A DNA stretch of 64,000 nt from Octopus bimaculoides (taxonomy: Eukaryota), in NCBI RefSeq assembly GCF_001194135.2, contig NC_069006.1, forward strand, positions 18,978,538-19,042,537. The letters run 5' to 3'. The stretch's first letter is position 1. The number at the start of each line of letters is the position of its first letter. A model generated the notes under the pieces. The model did no database searches and had not been told where the DNA came from. It saw only the letters and a program-made list of their open reading frames with translations. Positions 806 through 17,495 of this stretch are shown here, one piece after another. Position numbers and translations under genes: made by a program.

Positions 806-1059
806 GAGCTACACACACACACACATGCACACAAAACGGGCTTCTTTCAGTTTTTATCTATCAAATCTACTGAAAAGGTTTTGGTTGACCTGGGGCTATG
901 TTAGAAGAGTCTTGACCAAAGTACCTTGCACTGGGATTGAACTTGGGACTATGTGGTTGAGAAGCTAACTTCTTAATACACAGCCATGCCTATGTATGTA
1001 TTATATTCTCAAAAATTTATGCTCTTGTGCTAAGTTAGAATTTTATATATTTATTCTAG

Positions 1060-1182
1060 CGAATATTACTATTGGAACAAGCAATCTATCCATTGGTAAC
1101 TCTAATATCACAAATGTATTCAGCTCAGAACCGAGGAAGATAAAATCCGAGCATCATAGGGAGAAATTCATCAAATATTTCA
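1060..1182 (+). CDS. RHIM/death-domain cassette 1, exon a (RHIM-like motif + linker); internal exon, upstream exons lie outside the window or are unidentified
   Basis: Acceptor ttattctAG|, donor ttca|GTAAGT; 123 nt, phase 1-1. Reads (A)NITIGTSNLSIGNSNITNVFSSEPRKIKSEHHREKFIKYF. Homologous exon at 10597-10698 has the same splice context. Splices in frame to 1691. Confidence 0.85.
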
Positions 1183-1399
1183 GTAAGTAAATGCAGTTTC
1201 TATTTGTTGATTTCATATTAATCTTTTTATTTGTTTCAGTTGTTAGACTGTGACCATGCTGGGGCACTGCCTTGAGGGATTTTAGTCGAACTATTCGACC
1301 CCAGCACTCATTTCCTTTTTAAACCTGGTAGTTATTCTATCAGCTCTCTTTTGTTGAACTTCTAAGTTACAGGGACATAAACACACCAACACTGGTTGC

Positions 1400-1432
<33 letters not shown>

Positions 1433-1690
1433 GTCAGTTGATGGTGGGGGACAAGAGAGAGATGTATGGAATTGGGAGGAGATGATAAGTGAGCATGGCA
1501 CCAGCAAGACTTACATTATTTGGAAAATGCAATGGAAAAAATACAGTGAAATTGTCATGGAGAGTTGAATGTCTAACATTTAAGATAGAGTGTGAAATCT
1601 GATGGCGATTTGACTGTTATTTCTAAACAAAAACGTAAATATCAAACATTTCAATATAAAATCTTAAGAATCATGGAAATATTTTTGCAG

Positions 1691-1765
1691 AGTCTAATAC
1701 AGTACTGACTGAGAAACACCTCAACAAAATAGCCAAATACTTAGGGAATAAATGGAAGTCTGTTG
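1691..1765 (+). CDS. RHIM/death-domain cassette 1, exon b (death domain helix 1-2 start)
   Basis: Acceptor tttttgcAG|, donor gttg|GTAAGT; 75 nt, phase 1-1. Reads KSNTVLTEKHLNKIAKYLGNKWKSVG, the typical death-domain start (L..I...LG..W...GR). Confidence 0.92.
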
Positions 1766-1844
1766 GTAAGTATAAAATATACATTACTTTAGATGTTTGG
1801 CTTCTATCATATCTTTATGTCTTGTCTTTTACTTGTTTTAGTCA

Positions 1845-2205
1845 TTATATTGTTGCCATGCTGGGGCAGCACCTTGAAGAATTTTTAGTTGGATGAATCC
1901 AGTACTTTTTTTTTTTTTTTTTTTAAGCCCGGTGTTTATTCTATCAGTCACTTTTGCTGAACTGCTAAGTGATAAAGATACAAACACACCAACACTGGTT
2001 GTCAAGCAGTGGTGGAAACAAACATGCACACACACACACACGTGTGACAGGCTTCTTTCAGTTTCCATCTACCAAATCCACTCACAAGGTTTTGGTTGGG
2101 CTGGTGCTATAGTAGAAGACACTTGATCAAAGTCCCATGCAGTGGGAATGAACCTGGAATCATGCAGTTGGGAAGCAAATTTTCTTACCACCCAGCCATC
2201 CCTAC
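1845..2205 (-). mobile_element. tRNA-derived SINE, family 1 (about 400 bp, central CA/TA microsatellite), in cassette 1 intron
   Basis: Matches the full-length copies at 26859 and 56996; its 3' half is also present at the equivalent position in cassette 2 (13105-13310). Confidence 0.8.
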
Positions 2206-2311
2206 GCCTATCTAACTACAAAATAATGTTTAGTGAGTGCTAAGATACTTAATGTGATGAAGAAAAAATTTCAGTTGAAGTTGTTTTTGCTAGGAGGAGA
2301 GGAAAAGAATC

Positions 2312-2521
2312 TTAACCCTTTTGCTACCATACTTTTGTTGGAACTCTTCTTTTGTTGTAATTAATGTTGAAAATAATGAATTTATGAATATAACTGTTTT
2401 GAGATTAAGCTAGTGTTTTGAATATAAATTTGCATAAAAATTTGGGTTCAAGATTTTAATTCAAATCACTTAAAAAACAAGAAATTTGTAGCATAGAACC
2501 AAAGTCAGTATTAAAAAGTTA
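2312..2521. mobile_element. piggyBac-like MITE (degenerate)
   Basis: Left end TTAA-CCCTTTTGCTACC; right end degenerate (gtattaaaaagttag). A related left end occurs at about 14665. Confidence 0.45.
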
Positions 2522-3124
2522 GTGTTAACAAAATCTAATTCTAGACGAAGGGAGACAACTTCGAAATTGTAACGAATCAAAGTTTGAAACAATACAATGA
2601 GGAGATAAAGACATTATTAGCTAGAGGCTTAGTGAGTACAGTGGCAGGTGTGGACATATTTTGGATACAACCTTTATGCTAAGTCTCAATCACGTCATCA
2701 TGATCTTCCCTTATTTGGTAATATAGATCTTCTCACTTTACCTACCTTAATTGAATGTGTGAACAAGATGTGGACTTTGCAAGCCACGGATTACTCGTCT
2801 CAGAGATCAGTAACATTTTGACTAAGAAGTGATAAAAAGGGACTCTTTGATCCTCCCCACATGAGACAACCACTCTAGTGTCACCCAGTAAATTCCATGC
2901 TTCCCTATTCTCAATCTTTTGTCTTTTATCTTTTACTTGTTTCAGTCATTCGATTGCAGCCATGCTGGAGCACTGCCTTCAGAAATTTTAGTCAAACAGA
3001 TTGACCCCCCCCCCCCAGTACTTATTTTTCCTTTTAAGCCTGGCACTTATTCTATGATTCTCTTTTGCTGAACTGCTAAGTTACAGGGATGTAAACACAC
3101 CAACACCAGTTGTCAAGTAGTTTA

Positions 3125-3290
3125 TGTGCTTGTCTACATCACTTATAATCATTTCAGTATCACTTATTATTATCTGGATTCTTTCTATTTTCAGTCCCCA
3201 GTTTCTGCTTATCTCCATTTCTAGATCTTCATATCTGGATATTTTTTTTTCATTATCTATTTTTGTCCTTCGGAATCGATACATCATTTG
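3125..3290 (-). mobile_element. Decayed RLE-endonuclease LINE (R2/NeSL/HERO-type) C-terminal fragment
   Basis: ORF 3081-3287 EKKISRYEDLEMEISRNWGLKIERIQIII resembles the 'EK..KY.DL..E+...W......P+++' motif of restriction-like endonuclease domains. Confidence 0.55.
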
Positions 3291-3334
3291 CTATTATTAT
3301 TCTTCTTGTCAATGATATAATATTTTATTTTCAG

Positions 3335-3540
3335 GTCGGGATTTAGAAATTAAAGACGCTATGCTGGAAAACATAGAAGCAAACTACTCAAATAATGTTG
3401 AAGAACAAAGTTTTCAAATGTTAAACAAATGGTTACAGCTTTCCAAGTCGGAGACATGTACAACTAGCAAATTAGCTGAAGCACTCTTTGAGGCTGAATG
3501 TTATGATTCAATTCAATATTTACCATTAGAGGAGGAGTGA
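3335..3540 (+). CDS. RHIM/death-domain cassette 1, terminal exon (rest of death domain, RIPK1/Imd-like)
   Basis: Acceptor ttttattttcAG|, phase 1. Reads GRDLEIKDAMLENIEANYSNNVEEQSFQMLNKWLQLSKSETCTTSKLAEALFEAECYDSIQYLPLEEE*, with the death-domain hallmarks EQ.FQML.KW and T..L..AL. Stop TGA at 3538-3540. Confidence 0.92.
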
Positions 3541-3765
3541 TTATTAAAAAAAAAATGTTCTCCACCATGGTGTATGTCTTGAATAAGAAGAGCATTATTA
3601 CATCATTTAATTTCTAAATATCTGCTTATATCAATATTAATATCTGTTTATACCAGTATTAATATGACATATATTTAAGAACCAAAATCTTTTAAGTGCT
3701 TGGGGTCTCTATGGGTCTTAATCCAGCCTTGCCTACACATATATGTAGTTCAAAATATAAACAAC

Positions 3766-3783
3766 AATAAACCATAAAATAAA
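3766..3783 (+). promoter_or_regulatory. Tandem AATAAA poly(A) signals, cassette 1
   Basis: AATAAA at 3766-3771 and 3778-3783, about 230 nt after the stop; same arrangement in cassette 2. Confidence 0.7.
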
Positions 3784-3800
3784 TTTTTATTTTTCAAAAT

Positions 3801-4800
3801 TGTTGTGGGAGAATTCTGAACACCTACATGCGACTGAAAACGGACTAACAGATTTTCAATAAATAAAGAACTGTGTGAACTATCAGGAAGTTGATAGCAT
3901 TGATTGTCCATATTGGTTACTACGTTAGTTTAATATCATAACTATATTTGGAGTAGTACGGAGTGCATTCTGTGTTAACATAATAATACTGTGATAGGTT
4001 ATTCTAGATAACCATATCCGAGTAATTATTTAGGTAATACTATTCTTACACACACGTCATATTTTTGGTGATGAGGATATTTGAACCCATGCTGGACAGA
4101 TTATTGTTTGAACATGGAAGATTTACTAGCTTTGGTAATTCAATTACAGAAACAGCAGTTGTTGGAATTGCAGAAGCAACAGCAGCTGTTAGTACAACGG
4201 CTTCAGAAGAAAACAGAAAATATATCAAAAGGATGTGTTATAATACTATTCCACAGCCATACCAACAATCCACATATACAACTTTCAAACACATTTACCA
4301 ATGTACAACCATATTGATAAATAAATTCCATAAGTAAATTACAACCACTCCTAAATACGCAACTAAACAGCAACAGCTCTATTAAGTCATACAGAATTAT
4401 AATCCCAACCATCTTCCATAGTGTAATATAAAAGTAAAAGCTTAATGACCACATTATTTCAATCAATCAGTATATAGACAGGATGTGTAGTTCATTCTGA
4501 CATGGTCACAAACTCCATCTGAGAGTTTGCATATAATCCAGAGGAGGGTACAACTTTTCCTGCTTACTTTAGAAGGTATGAAGAAATTTTTAAAGAAGAG
4601 TGCTCTGACTAGCAAGATGAAAAATCATACCCGACTTTTGTTGAGAAAGTTGGCATCAGCCAAGCATGAGAAATATTGAAATTACATATTACCAAAGAGA
4701 CCAGGTTTTGAAGAAGATGTGAATATTTTGTCAAAGATTTTCGGCGGAAAACCTCTTTATTTAATATGCATTGGTAATGCATGAATATTACAGAAAAATA
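3801..4800 (+). mobile_element. 3'-truncated Ty3/Gypsy (Mag / K02A2.6-like clade) LTR retrotransposon: 5' LTR, PBS and decayed gag
   Basis: UTR homology with cassette 2 stops at 3800 and TGTTG begins at 3801; putative LTR to about 4059 with internal AATAAA. PBS TGGTGATGAGGAT at 4066-4078. Gag starts at 4114 (MEDLLALVIQLQKQQ); 4502-4800 reads NSI*EFAYNPEEGTTFPAYFRRYEEIF...TRLLLRKL...HEKY*NYILPK...LSKIFG..SLFN with stops and frameshifts. Confidence 0.8.
4066..4078 (+). promoter_or_regulatory. Primer-binding site complementary to tRNA-Ser(GCU) 3' end
   Basis: TGGTGATGAGGAT versus expected TGGCGACGAGGAT (11/13; both mismatches are CpG>TpG), based on the tRNA-Ser(GCU) 3' end ATCCTCGTCGCCA recalled from eukaryotic tRNAs. 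Confidence 0.65.
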
Positions 4801-5023
4801 AGATGTATATTTTATTATATATACTGGAATTGTTAATAGGGATAGGGAATGTAAGAGATTTAAAATTAATGAACTAACACCAGATATGTTTAAATAATCA
4901 ATTTTTGTGAAAGGTTTAATAGCAAAGAAAAATGTGGAAATTCATAACCAAATTCTGACTAAATTAGAGCAGAATCAGAAGTATTAGTGAGTAAAAAGAG
5001 AGAAAAATGACTGACAGCAAATA

Positions 5024-5312
5024 TACTAATTACAGGGTGGCAGCGCTAAGCAGTGATGTATGTAAATAGAAGGTTATTAGCAGCTCAAATATGCTAGAAG
5101 CATATTCCAAACCATAAAAATGCTGTTCACTGTGTTTTGCCACAGAGAAAACTTCTTGCTGTAACAAATGGTGTAAATAAACCAGCATCAGCTCACAGTG
5201 TGACAAAACACAGCAAATGGCTTTCTTATGGGTTCAAATATGCTTGAGACATATTTGAACTGATATAACCTTGGACTTCCACTAATATCCACTGAAACAA
5301 GGTATCAACTAA
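5024..5312. repeat. Downstream block shared by both cassettes (copy 1), with twin AATATGC-N5-GCATATT dyads
   Basis: Colinear with 14982-15265 (roughly 80% by eye); dyads at 5088-5106 and 5232-5260. Confidence 0.8.
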
Positions 5313-5838
5313 GGTAGACACATGTCTAATATTATATATTATAAATAATGTTATACATTATAACATCATATATCAATATGTATTGCCTTTTGGGCAAGAT
5401 CGAAATGTAGTGCATATGTGTGTGTGCAAGAGTTCCCTAGCTTGCATATTAAATATTCTGTCAGTTAAATCTGGTCTGTCAGCTAGTGTCTGTCCTGGAT
5501 AAACTTTGTGATACTGGTCGAGCAATGAAAATTAAATTATGGAGATGTATTTGCATAGCAAGTGACTTGATCTGAGATCCTGTGCTGAAACAAAATCAAT
5601 TGCAGCATGGAAGATGACTGTAAGCCATTTAAGAATGCACAAAAAACTGTTAGATTCACTTCTACATTTAAATTTTAATTTGTGCCAAAATATTTTCGTC
5701 ACTCTGAAACCATGACCGATTCACTGACAAAACTTTGTGCTGCATCTAGATATTCTTAAATGGCTTCTATAATGCAATTGTTTTTGAAAATGTTGAAGTG
5801 AATCTAATGGTTTTTTGTTTTCCTTGAAGCTGCAATTG

Positions 5839-5887
<49 letters not shown>

Positions 5888-6227
5888 TATAATGTAAAGA
5901 AACCACAAAAAGAAAAAAAGACCCTAGTGAAAAACAGCAACCCAGGATTTCGTGGATGAGATACATAAATATATTACTAATGATCCGATAAAGCAGAGAC
6001 CTAGAAGATGAAATACGACAAAGCAGTTATTAACAGAACTTTTTTATTTTTATGAATTTTCACAAATCTTTTTCAATTCTGTCTTCTGCAATATGGAGTT
6101 AATAAGATGATGCAAAAAGAAAAAAAATTTTTTTAAATCCCCAACCCCTCAATTTTTTTTCGGACAGTCCGAATCTACCATTTGTTTCTCTTTATAATTT
6201 CCAAATAATTTTTTAATATATTTTTGG

Positions 6228-6725
6228 AAAAAAGTCAATTGACAGTCTTCACACTTTTTCACATAATCCTGGACTTTATGTGAAATGCCAGTGTCTGCTG
6301 CATGTCCATCAACGATATTATTTTCTACTCTAGGCATAAGGCCTGAAATTTTGTGGGAGGGAACAGTTGATTAGATTGACTAATAGTACACAACTGGTAC
6401 TTAATTCATCAACCTTGAAAGGATGAATGGCAGAGTCGATTTCGGCAGAATTTGAACTCAGAATGTAAAGACATGAAATACCGCTAAGCATTTTGCCCGG
6501 CATGCTAACGATTCTGCCAGCTCGCCATCTTCAAGAAACATCTTTTCTACTCAAGGTGCTAGTTTCAAAATGTTTTTTGCATAATCATATCAATTCCATT
6601 ATGCAGAGGACAGAATCGAAAAAGTTATGAGAGGTTTTAGTAGGTCAATTGACAGTCTTGACACTTTCACACATAATCTTGGACATAATGTGAAATGCCA
6701 GTGACATGCTGCATGTCCATCAACA
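6228..6725 (-). mobile_element. Two decayed Gypsy/Ginger-type integrase zinc-finger (H2C2) fragments
   Basis: 6228-6322 reads VDGHAADTGISHKVQDYVKKCEDCQL; about 6600-6725 reads GISHYVQDYV*KCQDCQL...GIDM. The two share about 85 nt of direct repeat and are separated by a SINE. Confidence 0.5.
6340..6535 (-). mobile_element. tRNA-derived SINE, family 3 (central gactttgcctttcatcctttc domain)
   Basis: Shares sequence with copies at 18700-18845, 18865-18990, 55230-55420 and 55770-55895. Confidence 0.65.
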
Positions 6726-7199
6726 AGATTAGCAGACAGCCAGCCATACAGTGGTACGACATATAGTCTAAGTAGAAGAAAACCTTTTTAAGAGGAAAAA
6801 TGAAGTTGGAAGAGTGGTGAAAAAGTTTTAGGTACTTGTGGTCGCTGTAACCGATGGTGTGCCAGTTCTTCTATGTGTGTATAAAGATATAATTAAAACA
6901 ATATGTATACACCCACATAAATACACACACACATATACAACAAAGCCTAATGGTGTGAGTTTTCTAAAACTCCTTTAGGCACAAATGGTTTTCACAATAT
7001 GCAAACCCAATTGTATGAATGGATCATAAGATTGAACTGCAAAGTAAAAATTTGAAATGGCGTTGACAATAATTTTTGTTTCCATGGATGCGCATAAACA
7101 TGTACTCCAGCCTGGAAAACGCTATAACTGGTTAATGTGTATGACTGGGCATGCATAACAGGACATACAGAGAAACTCCTTTTCTTTTAAATATATTAC

Positions 7200-7995
7200 T
7201 AATGATCCAATACGACAGGCTTCTTTCAGTTTCTGTCTACCAAATCTGCTCACAAGGCTTTGGTTGGCCAAAGGCTATGGTAGAAGACACTTACCCAAGG
7301 TGCCATGCAGTGGGACTGTACCTGAAAAGTATGTGGTTGGCAAGCAAGCTTCTTACCACACAGTCACTCCAATCATTCACATAACCTATTTACATAATGT
7401 GAATGATAATATTTTGAAAACAAAAATGTTTAATATTTAATTTCATATGTAGGAGTAGCTGTGTGGTAAGAAACTCGCTTCCCAACCACATGGTTTTGGG
7501 TTCAGTCTCACTGCATGGCACCTTGGGCAAGTGTCTTCTACTATAGCCTCAGGCCGACCAAGTCTTTTTGAGTGCATTTGGTAGATGGAAACTGAAAAAA
7601 GCCCGTCGTATATGTGTGAAATTTATACCCCTTTATTTGTTTCAGTCATTTGACTGTGGCCATGCTGGAGCACCGCCTTTAGTTGAGCAAATCGACCCCA
7701 GAACTTATTCTTTGTAAGCCTAGTACTTATTCTATTGGTCTGTTTTGCTGAACCGCTAAGTTACGGAGATGTAAACACCAGTATCGTTTGTCAAGTGATC
7801 TTAGGGGGACAAACACAGACACACACATATATATAAGACGGGCTTCTTTCAGTTTCCATCTACCAAATCCACTCACAAGGCTTTGGTAGGCCCGAGGCTA
7901 TAGTAAAAGACTCTTGCCCAAGGTGCCATGCAGTGGGACTGAATCCGGAACCATGTGGTTCGTAAGCTAGCTACTTACCACACAGCCACTCCTAC
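7200..7995. mobile_element. Cluster of family-1 SINEs in alternating orientation (- 7200-7375, + 7450-7610, - 7625-7995)
   Basis: Direct match to the family-1 consensus; 7625-7995 is essentially full length. Confidence 0.8.
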
Positions 7996-9169
7996 GCCTA
8001 TAAAAAACAAAAGATGAAGACAGATGTATGAACAACAAGTAAGTGTATTAGTTTCACGCTTAGGAAAATGAAGAAGTCTTTTACGTTTCAAGCCTATGCT
8101 CTTCATCAGAAAGGAATAAAAGAAAATAAACAAAGAGAGAACTTGTAGAGTTTAGCAGTCCAACATGGTGAATATATGTATGTATTTGTGTGTCTGTGTC
8201 CCCACCACCATCGCTTGTCAACAGATGTTGGTGTGTTTACGTCCCTGTAAGTTAGCGGTTCGGCCCAAAAGACTGATAAAATAAGTACTAGGCTTACAAA
8301 GAATATATCTTGGGGTTGATTTGTTCGACCAAAGGCAATGCTCCAGCATGGCTGCAGTCAAAAGTATAACAGAATAATTGTGCATGCATGCATGGGAGAG
8401 AGAGAGAGAGAGAAACTGATAAACTAAATACAATTTTGTAATTGAAATACCAGTGACTTTAAAATTATGTCCCTTGCGTCTGTGACTGCCACTACCACCC
8501 ACTCCCACTTCATCTTGCTGTTTCACTTTCTTTTCCTCACCTTCGTGGGCAGCCACATATCGTGTTTCTTGTGCTCTAACTTCTTGTTGAACATCATTCA
8601 TAGAAAATAGTAGCGACCACCATAAAGAAATACAAAGGTTAGTTAACTTTTCAAATATGTTTTGGTTTTAAATAACCTCATTCTTTTTGTTAGTTTTTAT
8701 TTTATGCTTGTTAGATCTCTATCAAATCCTGAAACTTTCTTTAACTTAGAATAAACTATCTTAATACTGTGCTGCCAACCAGGAAGTACCTGCACTACAT
8801 AAAACCACTTATAACTTTGTGTTTGTTTGGAATTTTCAGAAAATGTTTGTGAATCTGTGTTCTATACACATGAATTCATATGTGTTCTATACACAGGAAT
8901 TCATATGATTATGAAAACTAAAATATTTGGTGTGCGTTTAAGGCAATATAACTTTATTTTAGCACAGCTCACAAATACCTCATGCCTTCCTTGCACTGAT
9001 ATTTATTGATATTTTTCAACGTTTTTCTCCCCATAAACTCATTTAATGGAATGATGATGCACTCAAGGGCAGTCAATTGCTGGGATTTATTAATAAGGAA
9101 AAATTTGAAAATTAGGGGTAGAGTTTAAAAAATTAAGAAAAGAAATGTTTTTTTCATAATCATATGTGG

Positions 9170-9545
9170 AGGCATGGCTGTGTGGTGAGAAGCCTACTTC
9201 CCAATCACATGGTTCTGGGTTCAGTCCCATTTCATGGCATCTCAGCCAAGTGTTTTCTACTATATTCGCAGGCCAACCAAAAACTCGAGAGTGAATTTGG
9301 TAGATGAAAACTGAAAGAAGCCCACATATATATGGCTATTTATATATGTATATAGCCATAAGTGTGTGTCTTTGTGTCTATGTTTGTCCACACATCATCA
9401 CTTGACAACGGGTGTTGGTGTGATTATGTCCCTGTAACTTTGCAGTCCAGCAAAAGTGACTGATAGAATAAATGCCAGGTTTAAAAATAAGCCCTGGAAT
9501 TGATTTGTTTGATTAAAACCCCTTCAAGGTGATGCTCTAGTATGG
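9170..9545 (+). mobile_element. Family-1 SINE
   Basis: Head ggaggcatggctgtgtggtgagaagc, central TA repeat and 3' body match the consensus. Confidence 0.75.
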
Positions 9546-9886
9546 GCTCACAACTTTTTTAGTACAATTTTTTGTTGCATGGGATCAAAACTATGAAATT
9601 CTTCACACATTCTCCTATCATTGAATCTAAGATAAAATAATATATTTTGTTTTTAAAATATAAATGTTATTTAGATCTAAATTTGACTGGTGGCGTTAGT
9701 TACTCTCCTATAACGTTGCTACAAATTTTGATGTAAACCTTTTTCTACTGGATCAAATCTCAAATTTTTTTTATGCCAAAATGTAGCTAGAGACCAGCCC
9801 TCTTCCAAAATGTTATCAGTTTTCAATTTGATTAAGAACTGAATTAACGACAAGTTCTGAAATATACTGCGTATGAGTAAATTGAA

Positions 9887-9924
<38 letters not shown>

Positions 9925-10596
9925 GAAGGTTTGAAAATGCACTTATTTTTTAAAAATATTTATTTACTTAACCGGTTTCACTTTTTTAGAAAAAGATTAT
10001 CAAAAGTCTTTTGAGAATAATAAAAAATGTTAAAAAACAGTCTGAGTATTAAAATGCATATATACATTCTTTGATGATAAAATATATTTAAAGTATAAAG
10101 CTTTGTATGAACTTTGTAGTGTTACATACTGATTGTCACACATTCTCTGATATATACTGCGTATGAGTATATATGTATGTATGTATGTATGTATATGTCA
10201 GAAAAAATATATTCAAGTAGAACAATTCAATCTTTTTGAGGAGTCCAAAAGGAGAGAAAAATAATATGAAAATGAAGAAAGTTTGCCAATGTGAGGACTA
10301 AAAGTATTTTGGATTACAAGACAGTGATTGAAACCTTTGGCATTATGCTGTGCTTGAGAAGAAGACCCATCAAGCTAAGTGAAACTATAGTCTCAATATA
10401 TACGACAGGCTTCTTTAAGTTTCCATCTATCAAATCCACTCAGTTTGGTTTGCCTCAGGATTTATTAGAAGACACTTGGTCCATGATGTCACTTTGCGAA
10501 GCAAACTTCTTAACACACAGCAATGCCTATGTATGTATTATATTCTCAAAAATGTATGATCTTGATGCTATGTTAGAAATTTTATATTCATTTCAG

Positions 10597-10698
10597 CAAA
10601 TATTAGTATTGGAACGAATGTTGTAGTCATGGGTGACTCTAGCATTGCAGAAAAGCCAAAATGTGAGAGTGATAACGATCAATTCAGCTGCTATCTCA
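10597..10698 (+). CDS. RHIM/death-domain cassette 2, exon a (RHIM-like motif + linker)
   Basis: Acceptor cattTCAG|, donor ctca|GTAAGT; 102 nt, phase 1-1. Reads (A)NISIGTNVVVMGDSSIAEKPKCESDNDQFSCYL; an in-frame 21-nt difference from cassette 1. Confidence 0.82.
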
Positions 10699-10734
10699 GT
10701 AAGTAAAAGTAGTTTCTATTTGTTTACTCTTTTT

Positions 10735-11110
10735 ACTCTTTTACTTGTTTCAGTCATTTGACTGCAGCCATGCTGGAGCACCGCCTTTAGTCGAACAAAT
10801 TGACCCCAGGACTTATTTTTTGTAAGCCTAGTACTTATTCTATTGGTCTCTTTTGCCGAACTGCAAAGTTATGGGGACGTAAACACACCAGCATCGGTTG
10901 TCAAGCGATGTTGGGGGGACAAACACAGACACACAAACACACACACATATATATATATATATATACATATATACGACGGGCTTCTTTCAGTTTCCGTCTA
11001 CCAAATCCACTCACAAGGCTTTGGTCGGCCCGAGGCTATAGGAGAAAACACTTGCCCAAGGTGCCATGCATGTGGTTGGTAAGCAAGCTACTTACCACAC
11101 AGCCACTCCA
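10735..11110 (-). mobile_element. Family-1 SINE, young full-length copy in cassette 2 intron
   Basis: Near-identical (reverse complement) to 56996-57402, with tail (gtaaaaga)n. Confidence 0.8.
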
Positions 11111-11217
11111 ACCTTTTACTTGTATCAGTCATTAGAAGGAGGCCATGCATATATATATGTATGCACATATATATATATGTGTCTGTACATATATATATGT
11201 ATGCACATATGTATATG

Positions 11218-11267
<50 letters not shown>

Positions 11268-11339
11268 TCTATAAATATATACATTGGGTTATCCCTGTAA
11301 ACAATGCATTTTTTTATACTTCTTTTATTTTCCAAAATT

Positions 11340-12060
11340 AAGATAAACAAAGTTCTTTTCTAATCTAAAATATACTCTCCTTCGTTTTCTACAATGCTCT
11401 TCTGTCTATCTGGTAGACTTGCAAGGCCCCTCTTCCAAAATTCTCTTGTCCGTGACGAAAAATACTCCTCCAGTACTGTTCTGACCTCGTCTACAGAATT
11501 CATATTTTTTCCATCCAAATGATTTTGAAGACTGCGGAATAAATGATAATCCGATGGGACAATGTCCAGCGAATATGGTGGGTGGGGCAAAAAAGGTTCA
11601 TTCATGAGATGTGACAGCAAAGAAGAGCACACATTCACTTGCAGCACGTGATTAGACTCGGAAAGTTTGTGAGCAACCTATTGACCCAATTTGCTTACTT
11701 TTCCGATGGCACACAGGTGTCAATGAATGGGTGAATGACCAAATCCAAGCTTTTCTGCTAGTTCCTCAACACTTACAATGGGATTTTGTTCCACTAGGGT
11801 TTGCAGGATGTCCTAATTGAGCGCTACAAATCTTCCAGGATGAGGCTCGTCTTCTAGTCTAATTTCCGTCTTGGAATTTCCGGAACCACTGTTGACACTG
11901 GCTTACAGTTATTGTCGAATCCCAATATACTACATTAATATTCCTCACACTTTCTGTTGCGTTGTTGCCTTTATTGAAATCATAAAGCAAAATAGCTTTG
12001 AAAAAATAACTGTTAAAATCAAACAGCACTCTTTAAAATTTGCAGTAAGAACAATCACAA
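11340..12060 (-). mobile_element. Internally deleted, decayed mariner transposase
   Basis: Minus strand reads LLYDFNKGNNATES...QWFRKFQDGN...KLGQ*VAHKLS...CSSLLSHLMNEPFL, joined directly to PHPPYSLDIVPSDYHLFRSLQNHLDGK...GEYILD* (WVPHEL- and YSPDL-type motifs; DD core deleted). Confidence 0.88.
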
Positions 12061-12967
12061 GGTGAACTTACTACCTGCTTTTATAGTAAGTGAATACAGG
12101 TAGTTTATCCTGTTCCCCTGTGACTTTTAGTTCATGCAATTGATAAAAACTGCATTATTTATGAGATGACCCTTATAAATGAGTAACAGTAGAGAACTAC
12201 AGGTGTCACTTCATGATGACCATTTCAAACAACTCGTTTAGTTAATTAACAAAAACATTACATCATTGTAAAGAAACCGTTTTCATCAGATAAATTCATG
12301 AACTTCAAAATATAGCACATTCAATATGATTTGACATAGTTTACAATCTATACAACAAAAATATTTCTAGAAATAGCAGCAGAAACAATATAAATGTTTT
12401 TGCTCTGTGGATTGTAAACTATGTTAAATCATTTTGAATGTCCTTTATTTTGAAGTTCATGAATTCGTCTGAGGAAAACTGTTTTTTTTCACAATGATGT
12501 AATGTCTTCATTAATCAATTAAAGGGTTCATTAGAAACAGTCATAATTGATTGACACCTGTACCTCTGCAGTTACTCGTTTACATTTTATTCACCTGTCT
12601 CGAAATCTGCTCTTCATAAATATTATGGACCATATATTTAATATAATGTACATGTCAAGAGTGGATTTCTTCATTCAGCTTGGTTTAATAGTCTACATAC
12701 ACTGCAAGAATATCATTTGGCTGGTATTTATGTAGCAAGTTTGATGTTTACATAATATTGTTGTGTGTGTGTGTGTGTGTGTAAGTTGCCAACTAAGGAT
12801 TACAAGGATTTAAAAGATTTGGGGATGACAAAACACCCCATGTGACTAACACAGGGTTAAGATAGAGTGTGAAATTTGATGGCGATTTAATTGTTATTTC
12901 TAAACAAAAAAGTAAATATGAAACATTTCAATATAAAATCTTAAGAATCATGGAAATATTTTTGCAG

Positions 12968-13042
12968 AGTCTAATACAGTACTGACTGAGAAACACCTCA
13001 CCAAAATAGCCAAATACTTAGCGAAAAAATGGAAGTCTGTTG
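12968..13042 (+). CDS. RHIM/death-domain cassette 2, exon b
   Basis: Acceptor tttttgcAG|, donor gttg|GTAAGT; 75 nt, phase 1-1. Reads KSNTVLTEKHLTKIAKYLAKKWKSVG; only 3 nt differ from 1691-1765. Confidence 0.9.
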
Positions 13043-13384
13043 GTAAGTATAAAATATCCATTACTTCAGATGTTTTGCTTCTATCATATCTTTGTTTTAT
13101 CTTTGACTTGTTTCAGTCATTAGACTGTGGCCATGCTGGTGCACCACCTTGAAGAATTTTTAGTCAGATGAATTCAGTACTTTTTTTTTTTTTTTTTTGA
13201 AGCCAGGTGTTTATTCTATCAGTCACTTTTGCTGAACTGCTAAGTTACAGAGATGCGAACACACCAACCCTGGTTGTCAAGCAGTGGTGGAAACAAACAC
13301 ACACATACACACGTGCACATAGGTTTGAAATAAGGTGGAAAAAGTAGTACTTGAATACCAAAGGTAGAAAAAAATGTTCTTTTA

Positions 13385-13522
13385 TTGAAGCTGGAAAAAC
13401 CTTCACAAGCTGTTACTCAGATTTTTATGTAACCTATCATCAGACAGTTGTGATACTGAATTATCAAATATTTCTGATGAAACTCTGAGTAAGAGTTTGT
13501 GGAGGATTTTTTCCAGCTTCAA
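13385..13522. repeat. Long imperfect foldback (hairpin) element
   Basis: Nested arms ttgaagctggaaaaa/ttttttccagcttcaa, ccttcacaagctgttactcaga/tctgagtaagagtttgtggagg (19/22), tcatcaga/tctgatga, tgata/tatca. Confidence 0.75.
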
Positions 13523-13534
13523 AAAATTAGTTCA

Positions 13535-13770
13535 TCATTTCTTTGGTGACATCCCTCCAGGATCAGGTCATGAATTTTCATGATGCTTTCATTCGTTTGG
13601 GAGGTCGACGGTCGCCTTGCATGAGGTTGGTCTTCAAATGACTAGTGACCCTTCCTACAGCATGGAAACCACTCATAAACTTGTGCTTCGCTTATGGCAG
13701 CATCCTTGTAAGCTGCTTGAAGTTTGACAACTGTTTCAGCGACCATTTTTCCCTAGTATAAATTTTTTCA
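13535..13770 (-). mobile_element. Mariner transposase N-terminal (HTH) fragment
   Basis: AETVVKLQAAYKDAAISEAQVYEWF...SFEDQPHARRPSTSQTNESIMKIHDLIL matches the mariner HTH-SGRP region. Confidence 0.75.
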
Positions 13771-13847
13771 TTATGTATCCCTCGAAATCGATACATTATT
13801 TACTATTATTATTGTTGTTGTCAATGATATAATATTTTTATTTTCAG

Positions 13848-14053
13848 GTCGAAATTTAGGGATTGAAAATGCTGACATAGATATAATACAAAGTGACAAC
13901 GTACTTAATACTGAAGAACAGAGTTTTCAAATGTTGAACAAATGGTTGAAGATGTCCAAGCCAGAGAAAGGTACAACTGGCAATTTAGCTAAAGCTCTCA
14001 TTGATGCTGATTGTCATGGTGCGATTCCATATTTACCATTAGATGAAGAGTGA
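13848..14053 (+). CDS. RHIM/death-domain cassette 2, terminal exon
   Basis: Acceptor tttttattttcAG|, phase 1. Reads GRNLGIENADIDIIQSDNVLNTEEQSFQMLNKWLKMSKPEKGTTGNLAKALIDADCHGAIPYLPLDEE*; same length as the cassette 1 exon, no stops or frameshifts. Confidence 0.9.
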
Positions 14054-14259
14054 TTAGCAGAAAAAAATTTCTCCACCGTGGTATGTTTTGAATAAGAAGA
14101 CCATTATTATATCATTTAATTTCTAAATATCTGCTTATATCTGTATTAATATTTGATTATACCAGTACTGATATGACATATATTGAAGTACCAAAATATT
14201 TTAAGTGTTTAGGGTCTTAATCCTGCCTACATATATATGTTATTCGAAATATGAACAAT

Positions 14260-14277
14260 AATAAACCATAAAATAAA
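14260..14277 (+). promoter_or_regulatory. Tandem AATAAA poly(A) signals, cassette 2
   Basis: AATAAA at 14260-14265 and 14272-14277, within a 3' UTR clearly homologous to 3541-3800. Confidence 0.7.
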
Positions 14278-14981
14278 TTTTTATTTTTCAAAATGAAAAA
14301 AAAACTAACAGTAAGATGGAAATTGTTCATTTTTGTATTCTTCTAGTTTCTTTATTTTGGAAAAGTTTTCTCCTCCTTTTTTAATTGCAAAGTCTTTGAT
14401 CAGATCCCTAAAATTAGTTTTACGTAACACATCTACGTTTATAATTAGTATAGATAAAGTATCCTGAATATTATCTTACCAAGTTTAAAGTGATTTCTTT
14501 TGTGCCGTAAACCATTTACCATTTCTCAGATTCCCTGCTTCTCTTGATGCACTAAGCATGTATTTATTTTGTATAATGATTAATCCAATGTTGTATGTAG
14601 GTATTCAGGATGTGCATCAGTTGTTAGCTGAACACTTTTAATTTTCAAATGTACCTTGCCTGCTTAACCCTTTTAATACCAACCTGCCTGAAACTACCCC
14701 TGGCTCTATGATAACAACCCATGTTTTCATATTACTAACTACTAAGTCAAAAGAAATTCAATTTATTGCATCTTTAGCGACTTCAGATATTGCTTAATCG
14801 ACAATGTATTATTTGAAAAGTGAATAAAACAAATTCTCATACTGAGGAGGGATGGGGGCTGAGATTCTAACTAGGGGTGCTGAGCACCCCATAGCCCGCC
14901 CACCCCCCGTGGCTACGTGTCTGTGAGAGGACAGACTACTTCTACCCGAAATTCATTCAACTAGCAGAGCCTGAATACTTT

Positions 14982-15265
14982 TACTAATTACAGGGTGGCA
15001 GCAATAAGCAGTGACGTGTACAAATAGAAAGTTATTAACAGCTCAAATATGCTAGGAGCATATTCAAAACCGTAAAAATGTCATTAAGTGTGTTTTTGCC
15101 ACTGAGAAAATTTCTTGCGATGGTGTTAATACACCAACATCAGCTCCCAGCGTCACAAAACACAGTGAACTGCTTTCTTACTGGTTCAAATATGCCTCGA
15201 GCATATTTGAACTGGTAATAACCTTGGACTTGCACTAATGTCCACTGAAACGGGGTATCAACTAA
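14982..15265. repeat. Downstream block shared by both cassettes (copy 2)
   Basis: Homologous to 5024-5312; dyads at 15046-15064 and 15184-15212 (12-bp perfect arms GTTCAAATATGC/GCATATTTGAAC). Confidence 0.8.
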
Positions 15266-15299: not shown

Positions 15300-15683
15300 C
15301 GCACAAGGGGGAGGTAAAAGAACAAAGTGAAATGAGAAAAAAGAGAGTTGTGTCCCTTTGACCTCTTCCACATCTGGTGCACGTTTTTCTTTAAGGATAT
15401 TTTTCATATAAAGGACAAAAAACAAGTTACAGGGAGTAGCATCGGGTGAATGGGGGTGGTGAAGGTAAGTGGAGTCATGCCATTTTTGGTCAAAAACTGT
15501 CTTACACTCCAGACGGTGCGCGCAGGCGCATTGTCGTGATAAAACCACCACTCTCCACTTCGCCACAGGTCATGCATTTTCGTCTTTGCCGCGTCTTGCA
15601 AATGCTTCAGAACTGCCAAGTGAAATGTCTGGTTAACAGTTTGGCCTGGAGGAATAAATTCTGTGTGGGTAATTCCTTTTGTG
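15300..15683 (-). mobile_element. Mariner transposase catalytic-domain fragment
   Basis: KGITHTEFIPPGQTVNQ...WWFYHDNAPART...FLTKNGM and, after a frameshift, HHPHSPDATPCNLFF (HDNA and YSPDL-type motifs). Confidence 0.85.
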
Positions 15684-15853
15684 AAGGCGCATAGCTCAGT
15701 GGTTAGAGCGTCGAACTTACGATCGTGGGTTGTGAGTTTGAATCCCGAACCGGGCTGCGTGTTGAGTTCTTGAGCAAGACACTTTATTTCACGTTGCTCC
15801 AGTTTCACTCCGCTGTAGAAATGAGTTGCAATGTCACTGGTGCCAAGCTGTAT
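15684..15853 (+). mobile_element. Family-2 SINE 5' part (tRNA-like head + central domain A), fused to the CRE LINE
   Basis: ggcgcaTAGCTCAGTGGttagagc...GTTTGAATCC A/B boxes; follows the 480-805 consensus up to ggtgccaagctgtat. Confidence 0.8.
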
Positions 15854-17495
15854 AGACCCTCCTACCTCTCTTTCAGTAACCAAATCATCGTCTCTGCCTC
15901 AGGAGTCAAACAAGGCGATCCACTCGGGCCTGCTCTGTTCGCATTGGGCATTGATGGCATCACTAAGATGGGGCTCAAGCTAGACCTTAATATCTGGTAT
16001 CTTGACGATGCTTCTTTGGAGGGGGAGGGACATCTAGACAGGGTTCTTGCCATTGCAAACAAAATGGTTAAGGAGCTTGGTCGTAGGGTCCCCAAGTAAA
16101 TAGCGCTAAATGTGAGCTCTGGATCCTCAACCACCTGGCTTCTCAACATCAACAATCTATAGACCTATTTGTAGAGCCTTTCCCTTCCATTGCAGTTCCT
16201 CCCTCATCGGTGTGGTGCTCCTTAGGAGCCCCAATTACTGACCTTGATTCTATATTTGCTTAAAGTCAGCTCCTCTGAGTAATTCCCATCTTGCCTCCAT
16301 TGCTTCAACAACCTAATTTTTGAGAGGTTTGAATACTTGGTCAATGTCAGGTTCTCTCCAGCGTGCTATGATCAGGCTGCATTGTACAAGCAATTTGGGG
16401 GTCTTGGTCTTTGTAAGTTTACATCCCTCTCTCTCCCCTCCTTCTGTTCCTCTATTCACGCCTGCTCCATCCTGGTGAGCAACATCTTCTCCTCTCCAAC
16501 ATGGACCAGTTCCAACAGGGAGTTCGATGAAGTTCTCCAACACAGTAGTGAATTGGGCTTGTCTGCTCCTGAGAAGGCGGAGGACTGTCGGAGTCAGAGA
16601 GCTTGGGACAATATAATTTCAAATGCCACCTTCAACTCATTCTTCATCCAGTTGGACCAGTTTCCAAGGTGCTGCTTACTATCTGCTTGCACCAAATACT
16701 CAGGTGACTGGTTTGATGCCATTCCTGTGGCTAACATCAGTGGCCCACTCAGCTTGGACGAACTTTGTGTTTCTATTGCCCTCAGAGTGGGAGCTGATGT
16801 CTGCATGAGTTTCAGTTATTGTTGTGTCAAGCTCCTTGACTTCACAGGCCTCCATGGTTTTTCTACCCGCCTGAATGCCGATCACTTCAAGCATCATACG
16901 GAATTAAACCTTACACTCGAGAGGAGTTTGGCCTGGGAAAACATCCCCTCCATCATGGAACCATCTGGGTTGTCCACATGTGATGGGAAAAGACCCGACA
17001 GCCTCACCCTGTACCCCTTGTTGAGAGGCAGATGCTTTGTCTGGGACATCACAGTTAGTGACTCCTTTGCTTCTTCTCACATCCTGGATGCTGTGGCCAG
17101 GGTGAGATCCACAGCTTCTGTGGCTGAGTGGAACAAAATCCTAAAGTACTACGATCTGTCAGCCAACTACATTTTCCATCTTGTGGCGCTTGAGATTTTT
17201 GGTGGGGTTGGACCACTGACTGCAAGATTCCTGTCTTTACTGGCAGATCTCCAAGCAGAGGTAACTGGTGAATCTTATAAGGGTGCTTGGTTGTTCCAGC
17301 GCATCAGCCTTCCCATCACCCGCAGCACCGCTACAAGTGTGGTGTGCCTCAATAGTCATTAGAGAAGTTTTCCCAGCACCCCAAAATGTTCAACCTAAGG
17401 TGGTGAATTGTTTTTGTTTTTTGTTTTGTTGTTTTTCTTCTTCTCACTCTTATGTATATATTTAATAAAGGGTTTACTAACCATGTAATATATCT
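15854..17495 (+). mobile_element. 5'-truncated CRE-clade non-LTR retrotransposon (RT C-terminal half + zinc knuckle + RLE endonuclease), frameshifted
   Basis: GVKQGDPLGPALF and WYLDD (RT); frameshift near 16095 (VNSAKCELW); 341-aa ORF 16337-17362 with QFGGLG, SQRAWD, degenerate C.C..D..G.H knuckle, DGKRPD, WDITV, E..K..KY, LFQRIS; 3' UTR with AATAAA near 17463. Confidence 0.85.

What the first reader, a model, noticed from the sequence alone, without database searches (positions are those of the whole stretch)
1060..1125. Non-canonical RHIM-like core (ITIG / ISIG) differing between the two copies
Seen: copy 1 ITIG-TSN-LSIG-NSN and copy 2 (10597-10650) ISIG-TNV-VVMG-DSS: two beta-prone phi-x-phi-G units in a N/S/T-rich context. 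Established: RHIMs have an (I/V)Q(I/V/L)G core and form functional amyloids; RIPK1 has IQIG..N..xIG, and Drosophila Imd/PGRP-LC use cryptic RHIMs. Inference: these are cryptic RHIMs with Q replaced by T/S, and the two variants might seed different amyloid partners. The N-terminal half of the motif would be on an upstream exon not seen here.
Basis: partly seen in the sequence, partly recalled or inferred. Interest (0 to 1): 0.7.

Follow-up and report, generated by a model that had tools for sequence, protein, structure and literature searches.

The report
RHIM-like motif in octopus death-domain adaptor
The flagged peptide is real and sits just before a RIPK1-type death domain in an octopus immune-adaptor-like gene, where vertebrate RIPK1 carries its amyloid-forming RHIM; only the first of the two tandem gene copies appears able to translate it.

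Summary
Window 1060-1182 (+) is a 123-nt phase 1-1 exon encoding NITIGTSNLSIGNSNITNVF... Window 10597-10698 is its diverged paralogue, NISIGTNVVVMGDSS...

The window is Octopus bimaculoides. Each exon is followed by two exons that encode a C-terminal death domain, whose best solved relative by far is the RIPK1 death domain.

Copy 1 is an intact 300/302-aa protein that NCBI names "RIPK1". It has no kinase. It consists of a disordered N-terminus with DEID|AVPL-type motifs, then the motif, then the death domain. That is the architecture of the fly adaptor IMD.

A profile-profile alignment with vertebrate RIPK1 runs from the death domain back into the motif and pairs LSIGNSNITNV with IQIGPHNSMTI. 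An annelid kinase+death-domain protein (VMVGSSNVMNV) and a related transcript (VQFGGHNTMHI) carry the motif at the same place. RHIM homology is therefore well supported, but Pfam's RHIM model does not match, and which tetrad is the core is ambiguous.

The exon evolves three times faster than its flanking introns. Copy 2's upstream coding exon is broken, and its annotated protein starts at the Met inside VVMG, so "two variants, two partners" is not supported. Amyloid formation is untested.

Verdict: new member of a known kind, moderate interest.

The parts
1060..1182 (+). Copy 1 exon A, which holds the motif and a linker. It encodes (S)NITIGTSNLSIGNSNITNVFSSEPRKIKSEHHREKFIKYF. Acceptor AG at 1058-1059, donor GT at 1183-1184, phase 1-1.
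   Evidence: Contained in P0004/P0151; tblastn 100%.
1062..1121 (+). RHIM-like segment NITIGTSNLSIGNSNITNVF. It reads as three 7-residue units, ITIGTSN | LSIGNSN | ITNVFSS. ITIG is at 1065-1076 and LSIG at 1086-1097.
1691..1765 (+). Copy 1 exon B, the start of the death domain. It encodes (K)SNTVLTEKHLNKIAKYLGNKWKSV. Phase 1-1.
3335..3540 (+). Copy 1 exon C, the rest of the death domain plus the TGA stop at 3538-3540. AATAAA signals follow at about 3760.
10597..10698 (+). Copy 2 exon A. It encodes NISIGTNVVVMGDSSIAEKPKCESDNDQFSCYL. ISIG is at 10602-10613 and VVMG at 10623-10634. The annotated start codon of P0001 is the ATG at 10629-10631, inside VVMG.
12968..13042 (+). Copy 2 exon B, the start of the death domain. 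It differs from copy 1's exon B at 3 of 72 compared bases (about 96% identical).
13848..14053 (+). Copy 2 exon C, the rest of the death domain plus the stop codon.
4666..4704 (+). First coding exon of the copy-2 gene, MRNIEITYYQRDQ. It matches exon 1 of O. sinensis LOC115224809 (P0003). Donor GT at 4705-4706.
8580..8637 (+). Decayed second coding exon of the copy-2 gene. Compared with O. vulgaris, the acceptor TAG has become TAA, there is an in-frame TAG at 8601-8603, and 10 nt are deleted.

Best explanation
Exon A encodes the RHIM-type interaction motif and the linker of a kinase-less RIPK1/IMD-like death-domain adaptor.

Shown:
- The window holds two tandem paralogues of this gene in Octopus bimaculoides.
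- Copy 1 is intact (300/302 aa). It has a disordered acidic N-terminus with DEID|AVPL, NKTD|AVPQ and K-AVPI motifs, then a 31-residue uncharged beta-prone island (ITIGTSN|LSIGNSN|ITNVFSS), then about 25 linker residues, then a RIPK1-type death domain.
- The island is positionally homologous to the RHIM of vertebrate RIPK1 and to the same motif in an annelid kinase+death-domain protein.

Inferred mechanism, by analogy with RIPK1 and Drosophila IMD:
1. On activation the island stacks with identical or related motifs into a cross-beta (amyloid-like) oligomer.
2. This clusters the death domains, which recruit FADD and a caspase-8-like protease.
3. The caspase cuts after DEID and exposes an AVPL N-terminus that binds an IAP.
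4. The IAP ubiquitinates the adaptor and switches on TAK1/IKK/NF-kB.

The residue at the 'Gln' position and the outward-facing positions change fast (T, S, N, F, V, Y, M, Q across relatives), while the phi-x-phi-G/N skeleton is kept. This fits a rapidly evolving immune interface.

Copy 2 in this genome has lost its N-terminal reading frame. It most likely makes only a 116-aa death-domain protein without the motif.
For: Gene structure and identity; P0001 maps at 100% to the window; P0004/P0151 contain exon A.

Death domain: Pfam Death at 28.8-40.5 bits, above the 22.6 cutoff. In the PDB search the RIPK1 death domain scores E=9e-12, against TRADD 2e-4 and FADD 3e-4. That alignment already includes the pre-domain stretch EKFIKYFKSNTVLTEKHL ~ AKYQAIFDNTTSLTDKHL.

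No kinase: Death is the only Pfam family above its cutoff in P0151.

Positional homology: right-anchored comparison. hhalign of cephalopod alignment A6 against vertebrate RIPK1 alignment A7 gives probability 99.6%, E=3e-24, 125 columns, and pairs LSIGNSNITNV with IQIGPHNSMTI. Owenia P0099 is kinase + VMVGSSNVMNV + Death. A vertebrate-RHIM HMM finds P0076 VQFGGHNTMHI as its best non-self hit.

Other support:
- Charge-free island and pattern count.
- Skeleton conserved in O. vulgaris and Argonauta.
- Exon divergence 18.7% against 6.2% in flanking introns, p=8e-4; dN 0.25 against dS 0.07.
- P0076 is an intron-less RNA contig carrying motif and death domain in one ORF.
- The IMD mechanism and the cRHIM definition come from PMC9496462, PMC13506858 and PMC9387487.
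- Copy 2 decay.
Against: - Pfam's RHIM model does not match octopus or Owenia at E<=10 or 0.1, although it does match gecko RIPK1 at 21.3 bits.
- phmmer and a profile of the invertebrate motifs find no RHIM chain in the PDB.
- The vertebrate-RHIM HMM gives octopus only about 1 bit.
- The canonical Gln is absent.
- The register is ambiguous (against 87).
- The hhalign score is driven by the death domain.
- Faster-than-neutral change could also mean the motif is no longer constrained.
- In the O. vulgaris assembly a 1-nt deletion separates the N-terminal exon frame from the motif.
- There are no expression data for O. bimaculoides and no biochemical data.
- Orthology to arthropod Imd was not tested by phylogeny.
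Confidence: 0.55

Rival explanations
1. Vestigial RHIM. The segment descends from the RIPK1-type RHIM but no longer forms amyloid in octopus. It now serves only as an uncharged linker before the death domain, and its fast change reflects relaxed constraint.
For: The Gln is lost and no RHIM model matches. The exon changes faster than its introns. Copy 2 lost 7 codons and its N-terminal frame. O. sinensis P0003 has charged residues inside the motif, GKNVAVGGE. The O. vulgaris upstream exon is frameshifted.
Against: Relaxed constraint predicts divergence equal to the introns, not three times higher. dN exceeds dS. The phi-x-phi-G/N skeleton and the charge-free island persist in copy 1, O. vulgaris and Argonauta. 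Fly cRHIMs also lack Gln and still form amyloid (PMC9496462).
Confidence: 0.25
2. Chance resemblance. This is an N/S/T-rich low-complexity stretch that happens to contain two phi-x-phi-G units and is unrelated to RHIM.
For: phi-x-phi-G is a weak pattern: 30 of 237 death-domain instances have one within the 60 residues upstream. Sequence models do not detect RHIM.
Against: The position relative to the death domain is the same in RIPK1, Owenia, P0076 and Argonauta. hhalign extends into the motif. The extended pattern is found only at this site among 73,000 residues. The 31-residue charge-free run stands in a protein that is 28% charged.
Confidence: 0.1
3. Another kind of element: an N-glycosylated linker (sequons NIT, NLS, NIT) or a single LRR-like unit.
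For: Copy 1 has three N-x-S/T sequons. The motif profile's only PDB hit is an internalin LRR, NLYIGTNKITDI, at E=0.073.
Against: By inspection of P0151 (MDGSSGLHREDEID...) there is no sign of a signal peptide (no predictor was run), and the protein is a death-domain adaptor, so it should be cytosolic. The sequons are not kept in O. vulgaris or copy 2. There is one unit, not an LRR array, and both flanks are disordered.
Confidence: 0.03

Closest known systems
Drosophila IMD (immune deficiency adaptor) and its cryptic RHIM
   Same: Both are about 270-300 aa with no kinase. Both have a disordered N-terminus with a caspase site followed by an Ala-x-Pro IAP-binding-type neo-N-terminus (octopus DEID|AVPL), a Gln-less RHIM-like motif in the middle, and a C-terminal RIPK1-like death domain. 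Imd genes also evolve fast, with positive selection reported in Hemiptera (PMC12137711).
   Different: Orthology was not shown here: no fly sequence was compared and no tree was built. The octopus has several AVP motifs and a tandem three-unit motif. The upstream receptors are unknown. The literature says the Imd adaptor has not been found in molluscs (PMC9835746).
Vertebrate RIPK1 C-terminal half (RHIM plus death domain)
   Same: The death domain is the best PDB match (E=9e-12). The pre-domain stretch K(Y/F)xxxFxxxTxLTxKHL is shared. The motif lies at the same distance from the domain, and hhalign pairs LSIGNSNITNV with IQIGPHNSMTI. NCBI already names the gene RIPK1.
   Different: There is no kinase domain. 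The core Gln is replaced by T or S. Pfam's RHIM model is not matched. The protein is 300 aa, against about 670-790 aa.
Owenia fusiformis CAH1778590.1 (P0099), an annelid kinase + motif + death-domain protein
   Same: It is a spiralian. Its motif CNNVMVGSSNVMNV lies in a 39-residue charge-free island at the same place before the death domain. The core Gln is also replaced, by Met.
   Different: It keeps the kinase domain, so it has the RIPK1 layout, whereas the octopus genes have the IMD layout.
Lineus ruber Imd (first spiralian imd reported, PMC9835746)
   Same: It is a spiralian death-domain-only adaptor assigned to the Imd pathway.
   Different: That paper reports no RHIM motifs in nemertean data. 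Its sequence was not compared here.

Membership tests
Canonical RHIM (Pfam PF12721) | Core tetrad (V/I)-Q-(V/I/L/C)-G | tested here: not met
   The tetrads are ITIG and LSIG in copy 1 and ISIG and VVMG in copy 2. Positions 3 and 4 fit in copy 1 and in ISIG; the Gln is absent in all four, and VVMG has Met at position 3. The definition is from PMC13506858.
Canonical RHIM (Pfam PF12721) | Match to the curated RHIM profile | tested here: not met
   No Pfam family at E<=10 for the three exon-A peptides, and none for P0151, P0076, P0016 or P0099 at E<=0.1. Gecko RIPK1 scores 21.3 bits against a cutoff of 20.
Canonical RHIM (Pfam PF12721) | An 18-20-residue uncharged beta-prone segment flanked by disordered sequence | tested here: met
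   A 31-residue charge-free island; the RHIMs of gecko, lungfish and Owenia sit in islands of 23, 22 and 39 residues.
Canonical RHIM (Pfam PF12721) | Forms cross-beta fibrils and mediates homotypic binding | not testable with these tools
   This needs peptide biochemistry.
Cryptic RHIM (IMD-pathway type) | RHIM-like motif that lacks the conserved Gln but keeps (V/I)xxG | tested here: met
   ITIG, ISIG and VVMG fit; LSIG has Leu at the first position. Definitions are from PMC9496462, PMC13506858 and PMC9387487. This criterion is weak.
Cryptic RHIM (IMD-pathway type) | Positional homology to the RIPK1/IMD RHIM upstream of the death domain | tested here: met
   (hhalign probability 99.6%, with the alignment reaching into the motif).
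IMD adaptor | C-terminal RIPK1-like death domain and no kinase domain | tested here: met
IMD adaptor | N-terminal caspase site that exposes an IAP-binding motif | tested here: inconclusive
   The sequence pattern is present and conserved. O. bimaculoides has DEID|AVPL and NKTD|AVPQ, O. vulgaris has DETD|AVPL, and P0076 has KID|AMPV and KPD|AMPI. Neither cleavage nor IAP binding was tested.
IMD adaptor | Orthology to arthropod Imd by phylogeny | not tested
   There is only similarity evidence. Starting from P0001, the leafhopper protein P0072 scores E=5.7e-7 and the RIPK1s score 1e-6 to 2e-5.
RIPK1 | N-terminal Ser/Thr kinase domain | tested here: not met
   P0151 matches only Death above the Pfam cutoff. 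The upstream exon encodes a disordered acidic segment. The NCBI name reflects the death domain only.

The most novel reading that the evidence does not exclude
Octopuses have a working IMD-type adaptor: a caspase-exposed AVPx IAP-binding motif, a Gln-less RHIM that signals by amyloid assembly, and a RIPK1-type death domain. It is encoded in a tandem, positively selected, birth-and-death gene cluster. Together with the annelid kinase+motif+death-domain protein, this would place the RHIM-death-domain module, and amyloid-based NF-kB signalling, in the last common ancestor of bilaterians. It would also overturn the published statement that molluscs lack the Imd adaptor.
Probability: 0.35. Interest if true: 0.65.

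Novelty: new member of a known kind. Interest (0 to 1): 0.5.

Why it matters
RHIM and cRHIM amyloids are the switch for necroptosis in vertebrates and for the IMD antibacterial pathway in insects. How old that switch is, and whether lophotrochozoans use it, remains open. A 2023 survey states that the Imd adaptor and RHIM-bearing receptors have not been found in molluscs (PMC9835746).

The octopus locus offers a concrete, testable candidate with all three IMD hallmarks, and it carries natural variants at the 'Gln' position (T, S, N, F, V, Y, M, Q across relatives). It also shows that the database name 'RIPK1' is misleading for this gene. In addition, the second copy is a natural motif-less, death-domain-only version that could act as a decoy.

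Tried and rejected
- The search for homologous proteins with the 41-aa exon peptide found nothing. With alignments A1 and A4 it returned only P0001, P0002, P0003 and a sea-cucumber CRADD-like protein. The word index missed P0004, P0016 and P0076, which the exhaustive search did find.
- Pfam scans of the exon peptides found no family, including RHIM, at E<=10.
- phmmer of the motif against the PDB found nothing. The profile of invertebrate motifs hit only an internalin LRR. The LRR reading was rejected because there is one unit, not an array.
- The N-glycosylation reading was rejected: the protein is a cytosolic adaptor and the sequons are not conserved.
- TE-derived exon was rejected: the exon lies between two SINEs, but 993-1224 has no copy in the window other than the paralogue, and homologues exist in Argonauta and other species.
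- A six-frame scan of 3800-10596 for kinase or other exons of copy 2 found none. Exon 3 of the O. sinensis orthologue was not found in the window.
- Literature searches for RHIM in octopus or molluscs found nothing relevant. Kleino et al. 2017 and the 2019 review are not held, so the fly Imd cRHIM sequence itself was not compared.
- No structure prediction was run. It cannot model amyloid, and the death domain was already settled by sequence.

Full report
**What is at the coordinates**

Window 1060-1182 (+) is bounded by a pyrimidine tract with an AG acceptor (1058-1059) and by a GTAAGT donor (1183). It is 123 nt long, with one frame open, and encodes NITIGTSNLSIGNSNITNVFSSEPRKIKSEHHREKFIKYF. 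Window 10597-10698 has the same signals. It is 102 nt long and encodes NISIGTNVVVMGDSSIAEKPKCESDNDQFSCYL. Both exons are phase 1-1.

A self-comparison shows a colinear duplication, 957-5312 <-> 10494-15265, at 74-92% identity.

**The gene**

Two further exons follow each copy.
- Exon B (1691-1765 and 12968-13042) encodes SNTVLTEKHL(N/T)KIAKYL(G/A)(N/K)KWKSV.
- Exon C (3335-3540 and 13848-14053) encodes the rest of a death domain and the stop codon.

Pfam's Death model is matched above its cutoff.

The window is Octopus bimaculoides chromosome CM046626.1. P0001 (116 aa, NCBI 'RIPK1') maps at 100% to copy 2. P0004/P0151 (300/302 aa, 'RIPK1 isoforms X2/X1') are copy 1 and include exon A in frame...GEKILSMFSQC|S|NITIGTSNLSIGNSNITNVFSS....

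The large upstream exon of copy 1 is a continuous ORF lying 1.6-2.1 kb before window position 1.

**What kind of protein**

P0151 has no kinase domain; Death is the only Pfam family above its cutoff. Against all PDB sequences, the death domain matches the RIPK1 death domain at E=9e-12. The next matches are TRADD at 2e-4 and FADD at 3e-4. The alignment already includes the pre-domain stretch EKFIKYFKSNTVLTEKHL ~ AKYQAIFDNTTSLTDKHL.

The N-terminal 165 residues are acidic and disordered-looking. They carry HREDEID|AVPL, NKTD|AVPQ and K-AVPI. The same motifs are kept in O. vulgaris (DETD|AVPL) and in a related transcript, P0076 (KID|AMPV, KTD|ANPI, KPD|AMPI).

A DExD-type caspase site followed by Ala-Val-Pro is the form of an IAP-binding motif that caspase cleavage exposes; that this form marks such a motif is established knowledge. 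In Drosophila IMD the Dredd caspase exposes such a motif (PMC9496462).

The layout is therefore that of IMD (disordered N-terminus with caspase/IAP motif, cRHIM, RIPK1-like death domain). It is not that of RIPK1.

**Is the motif a RHIM relative?**

Evidence for:
1. When sequences are right-anchored on the conserved Trp of the death domain, the phi-x-phi-G cores lie 47-62 residues upstream in octopus copy 1, O. vulgaris, Argonauta (P0016: NINSIGSVSHYVGNNNTFNIG), P0076 (LKIGNITASNVQFGGHNTMHI), the annelid Owenia (P0099: CNNVMVGSSNVMNV) and RIPK1 of cow, gecko and lungfish.
2. Owenia P0099 has a kinase domain, this motif and a death domain. A spiralian RIPK1-layout protein thus carries a Gln-less motif at the RHIM position.
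3. hhalign of a cephalopod alignment (A6) against a vertebrate RIPK1 alignment (A7) gives probability 99.6%, E=3e-24 and 125 columns. The alignment runs from the death domain through the linker, with one 4-residue gap, into the motif. It pairs LSIGNSNITNV with IQIGPHNSMTI.
4. An HMM built only from three vertebrate RHIMs finds P0076's SNVQFGGHNTMHI as its best non-self hit among 179 death-domain relatives (E=0.002 for that small set). The family therefore includes a member with a Gln-containing core.
5. The motif is a 31-residue charge-free island in a protein that is 28% charged. RHIMs of RIPK1 and Owenia sit in similar islands.
6. The pattern [IVLM]x[IVLMF]GxxNxxx[IVLM] occurs 11 times in the 73,000 residues of these relatives, always at this site. 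Shuffles predict 3.0+-1.8 occurrences anywhere. The pattern was chosen after seeing the sequences.

Evidence against:
- Pfam's RHIM model does not match any invertebrate member, while it does match gecko RIPK1.
- phmmer and a profile of the invertebrate motifs find no RHIM chain in the PDB.
- Octopus scores about 1 bit with the vertebrate HMM.
- The Gln of the tetrad is absent.

By the literature's definition, a RHIM that lacks the Gln is a 'cryptic RHIM' (PMC9496462, PMC13506858). Divergent RHIMs in invertebrate immune proteins have been reported before (PMC4262963).

**Which tetrad is the core?**

The segment reads as three 7-residue units: ITIGTSN | LSIGNSN | ITNVFSS. hhalign pairs the second unit with IQIG. 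MAFFT pairs the first unit with IQIG and LSIG with the MEIG of cow RIPK1 (IQIGDSNYMEIGG). The data do not decide between them. Mutating each tetrad would.

**Evolution**

Between copy 1 and its O. vulgaris counterpart, exon A differs at 18.7% of sites, against 6.2% in the flanking intron (Fisher p=8e-4). Between the two copies the figures are 33% against 15% (p=8e-4). For exon A dN=0.25 and dS=0.07. Exon B shows 7 non-synonymous and 0 synonymous changes.

The changes fall on T3, T6, L9, S10, S14, N15 and I16. N-I-x-I-G-x-S-N-phi-x-I-G-N is kept. Divergence faster than the introns together with a kept skeleton points to diversifying selection on a translated interface, as reported for hemipteran Imd (PMC12137711).

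The cluster is also mosaic. Exon B and its surroundings are 92% identical between the copies, which suggests gene conversion. O. vulgaris exon C has dS=0.73 to copy 1 but 0.27 to copy 2.

**Copy 2**

Its orthologue in O. sinensis (P0003, 205 aa) is intact and carries ...GEANIGNGKNVAVGGESNVTN....

In the window, P0003's first coding exon is present at 4666-4704. The second exon (8580-8637) is broken relative to O. vulgaris: it has lost its acceptor (TAG->TAA), has an in-frame TAG at 8601-8603 and has a 10-nt deletion. Direct splicing of exon 1 to exon A2 would be out of frame.

NCBI's protein for copy 2 starts at the ATG at 10629, the Met of VVMG. ISIG is therefore most likely not translated in O. 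bimaculoides, and copy 2 makes at most a death-domain-only protein. The idea that the two variants seed different partners has no support in this genome.

**Caveat on O. vulgaris**

The O. vulgaris assembly has a 1-nt deletion in the upstream exon of the copy-1 orthologue. It puts the AVP-bearing part and the motif in different frames. The annotation there splits the locus into a 453-aa and an 84-aa product. This is either a real disruption or an assembly error. I could not tell which.

**Verdict**

This is a RHIM-homologous, Gln-less motif in an IMD-like (not RIPK1) adaptor, intact in copy 1 only.
- The amyloid function and the IMD-like signalling steps are inferred.
- The literature I could search does not describe this motif in cephalopods. 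It states that molluscs lack the Imd adaptor (PMC9835746), although 'RIP1-like' hits are listed in mollusc transcriptomes (PMC4199593, PMC4892480).
- I rate it a new member of a known kind, interest 0.5.

Noticed in passing
L004:5636-6115 (1.6-2.1 kb upstream of window position 1); L001:6469-6950; P0076: The N-terminal exon of copy 1 carries repeated caspase-site plus Ala-Val-Pro motifs (DEID|AVPL, K-AVPI, NKTD|AVPQ). They are conserved in O. vulgaris and, as D|AMPV, D|ANPI and D|AMPI, in a related transcript. They look like IAP-binding motifs of the IMD/Smac type.
   Followed up: partly
window 8580-8637 and 4666-4704: The copy-2 gene keeps its first coding exon, but its second coding exon is decayed: lost acceptor, in-frame TAG and a 10-nt deletion relative to O. 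vulgaris. Copy 2 is N-terminally truncated in O. bimaculoides.
   Followed up: yes
L001:6765-6775 (O. vulgaris OX597839.1): There is a 1-nt deletion relative to O. bimaculoides in the upstream exon of the copy-1 orthologue. The annotation splits the locus into a 453-aa and an 84-aa protein. This is either a real frameshift or an assembly error.
   Followed up: partly
window 1580-2044 vs 12857-13315: The block around exon B is 92% identical between the copies (exon B itself differs at 3 of 72 bases), against 74-84% for the other duplicated blocks. This looks like a gene-conversion tract.
   Followed up: partly
L001:16364-16567 vs window 3335-3540 and 13848-14053: Exon C of the O. vulgaris gene that carries the copy-1-type exon A has dS=0.73 to copy 1 and 0.27 to copy 2. 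The tandem paralogues have exchanged parts, so the genes are mosaic.
   Followed up: partly
window exons A, B, C of both copies: All three exons are phase 1-1, so skipping exon A or exon B keeps the frame. The O. vulgaris model P0002 skips exon B. Isoforms with and without the motif are possible, as described for a Rhodnius PGRP (PMC9387487).
   Followed up: no
proteins P0007, P0009, P0013, P0015, P0022, P0029 (octopus paralogues): After the cephalopod paralogues, the nearest death domains belong to a large octopus family of ankyrin-repeat + RING ('MIB2-like') + death-domain proteins with no motif. The death domain seems to have been shuffled and expanded in octopus.
   Followed up: no
window 23105-25051 (-): A 648-aa ORF, annotated as a 653-aa gene, rich in Q, N and P. 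It has no Pfam match at E<=0.01.
   Followed up: partly
window 811-992, 1225-1409, 10405-10478, 10740-10911 and many others; 11360-11647 (-), 15404-15883 (-), 15725-17362 (+): Both motif exons lie between two families of abundant SINE-like repeats. Transposase remnants (weak Transposase_1 match for 15404-15883; the 11360-11647 ORF resembles one by eye only, no Pfam hit) and a long unclassified ORF (16337-17362, no Pfam hit) lie between and after the copies. The window also has many N gaps and CA/TA microsatellites.
   Followed up: partly
P0110 (Elysia crispata), P0072 (Macrosteles), P0134 (unknown source): Short death-domain-only proteins from a sea slug, a leafhopper and an unnamed source carry other beta-prone motifs at the same pre-domain position: PTIVVHNANLVTSGDITIHN, KVHIGDEIVQTYNI and VVQGDLVLGTQI. 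IMD-like adaptors may be wider spread than reported.
   Followed up: no
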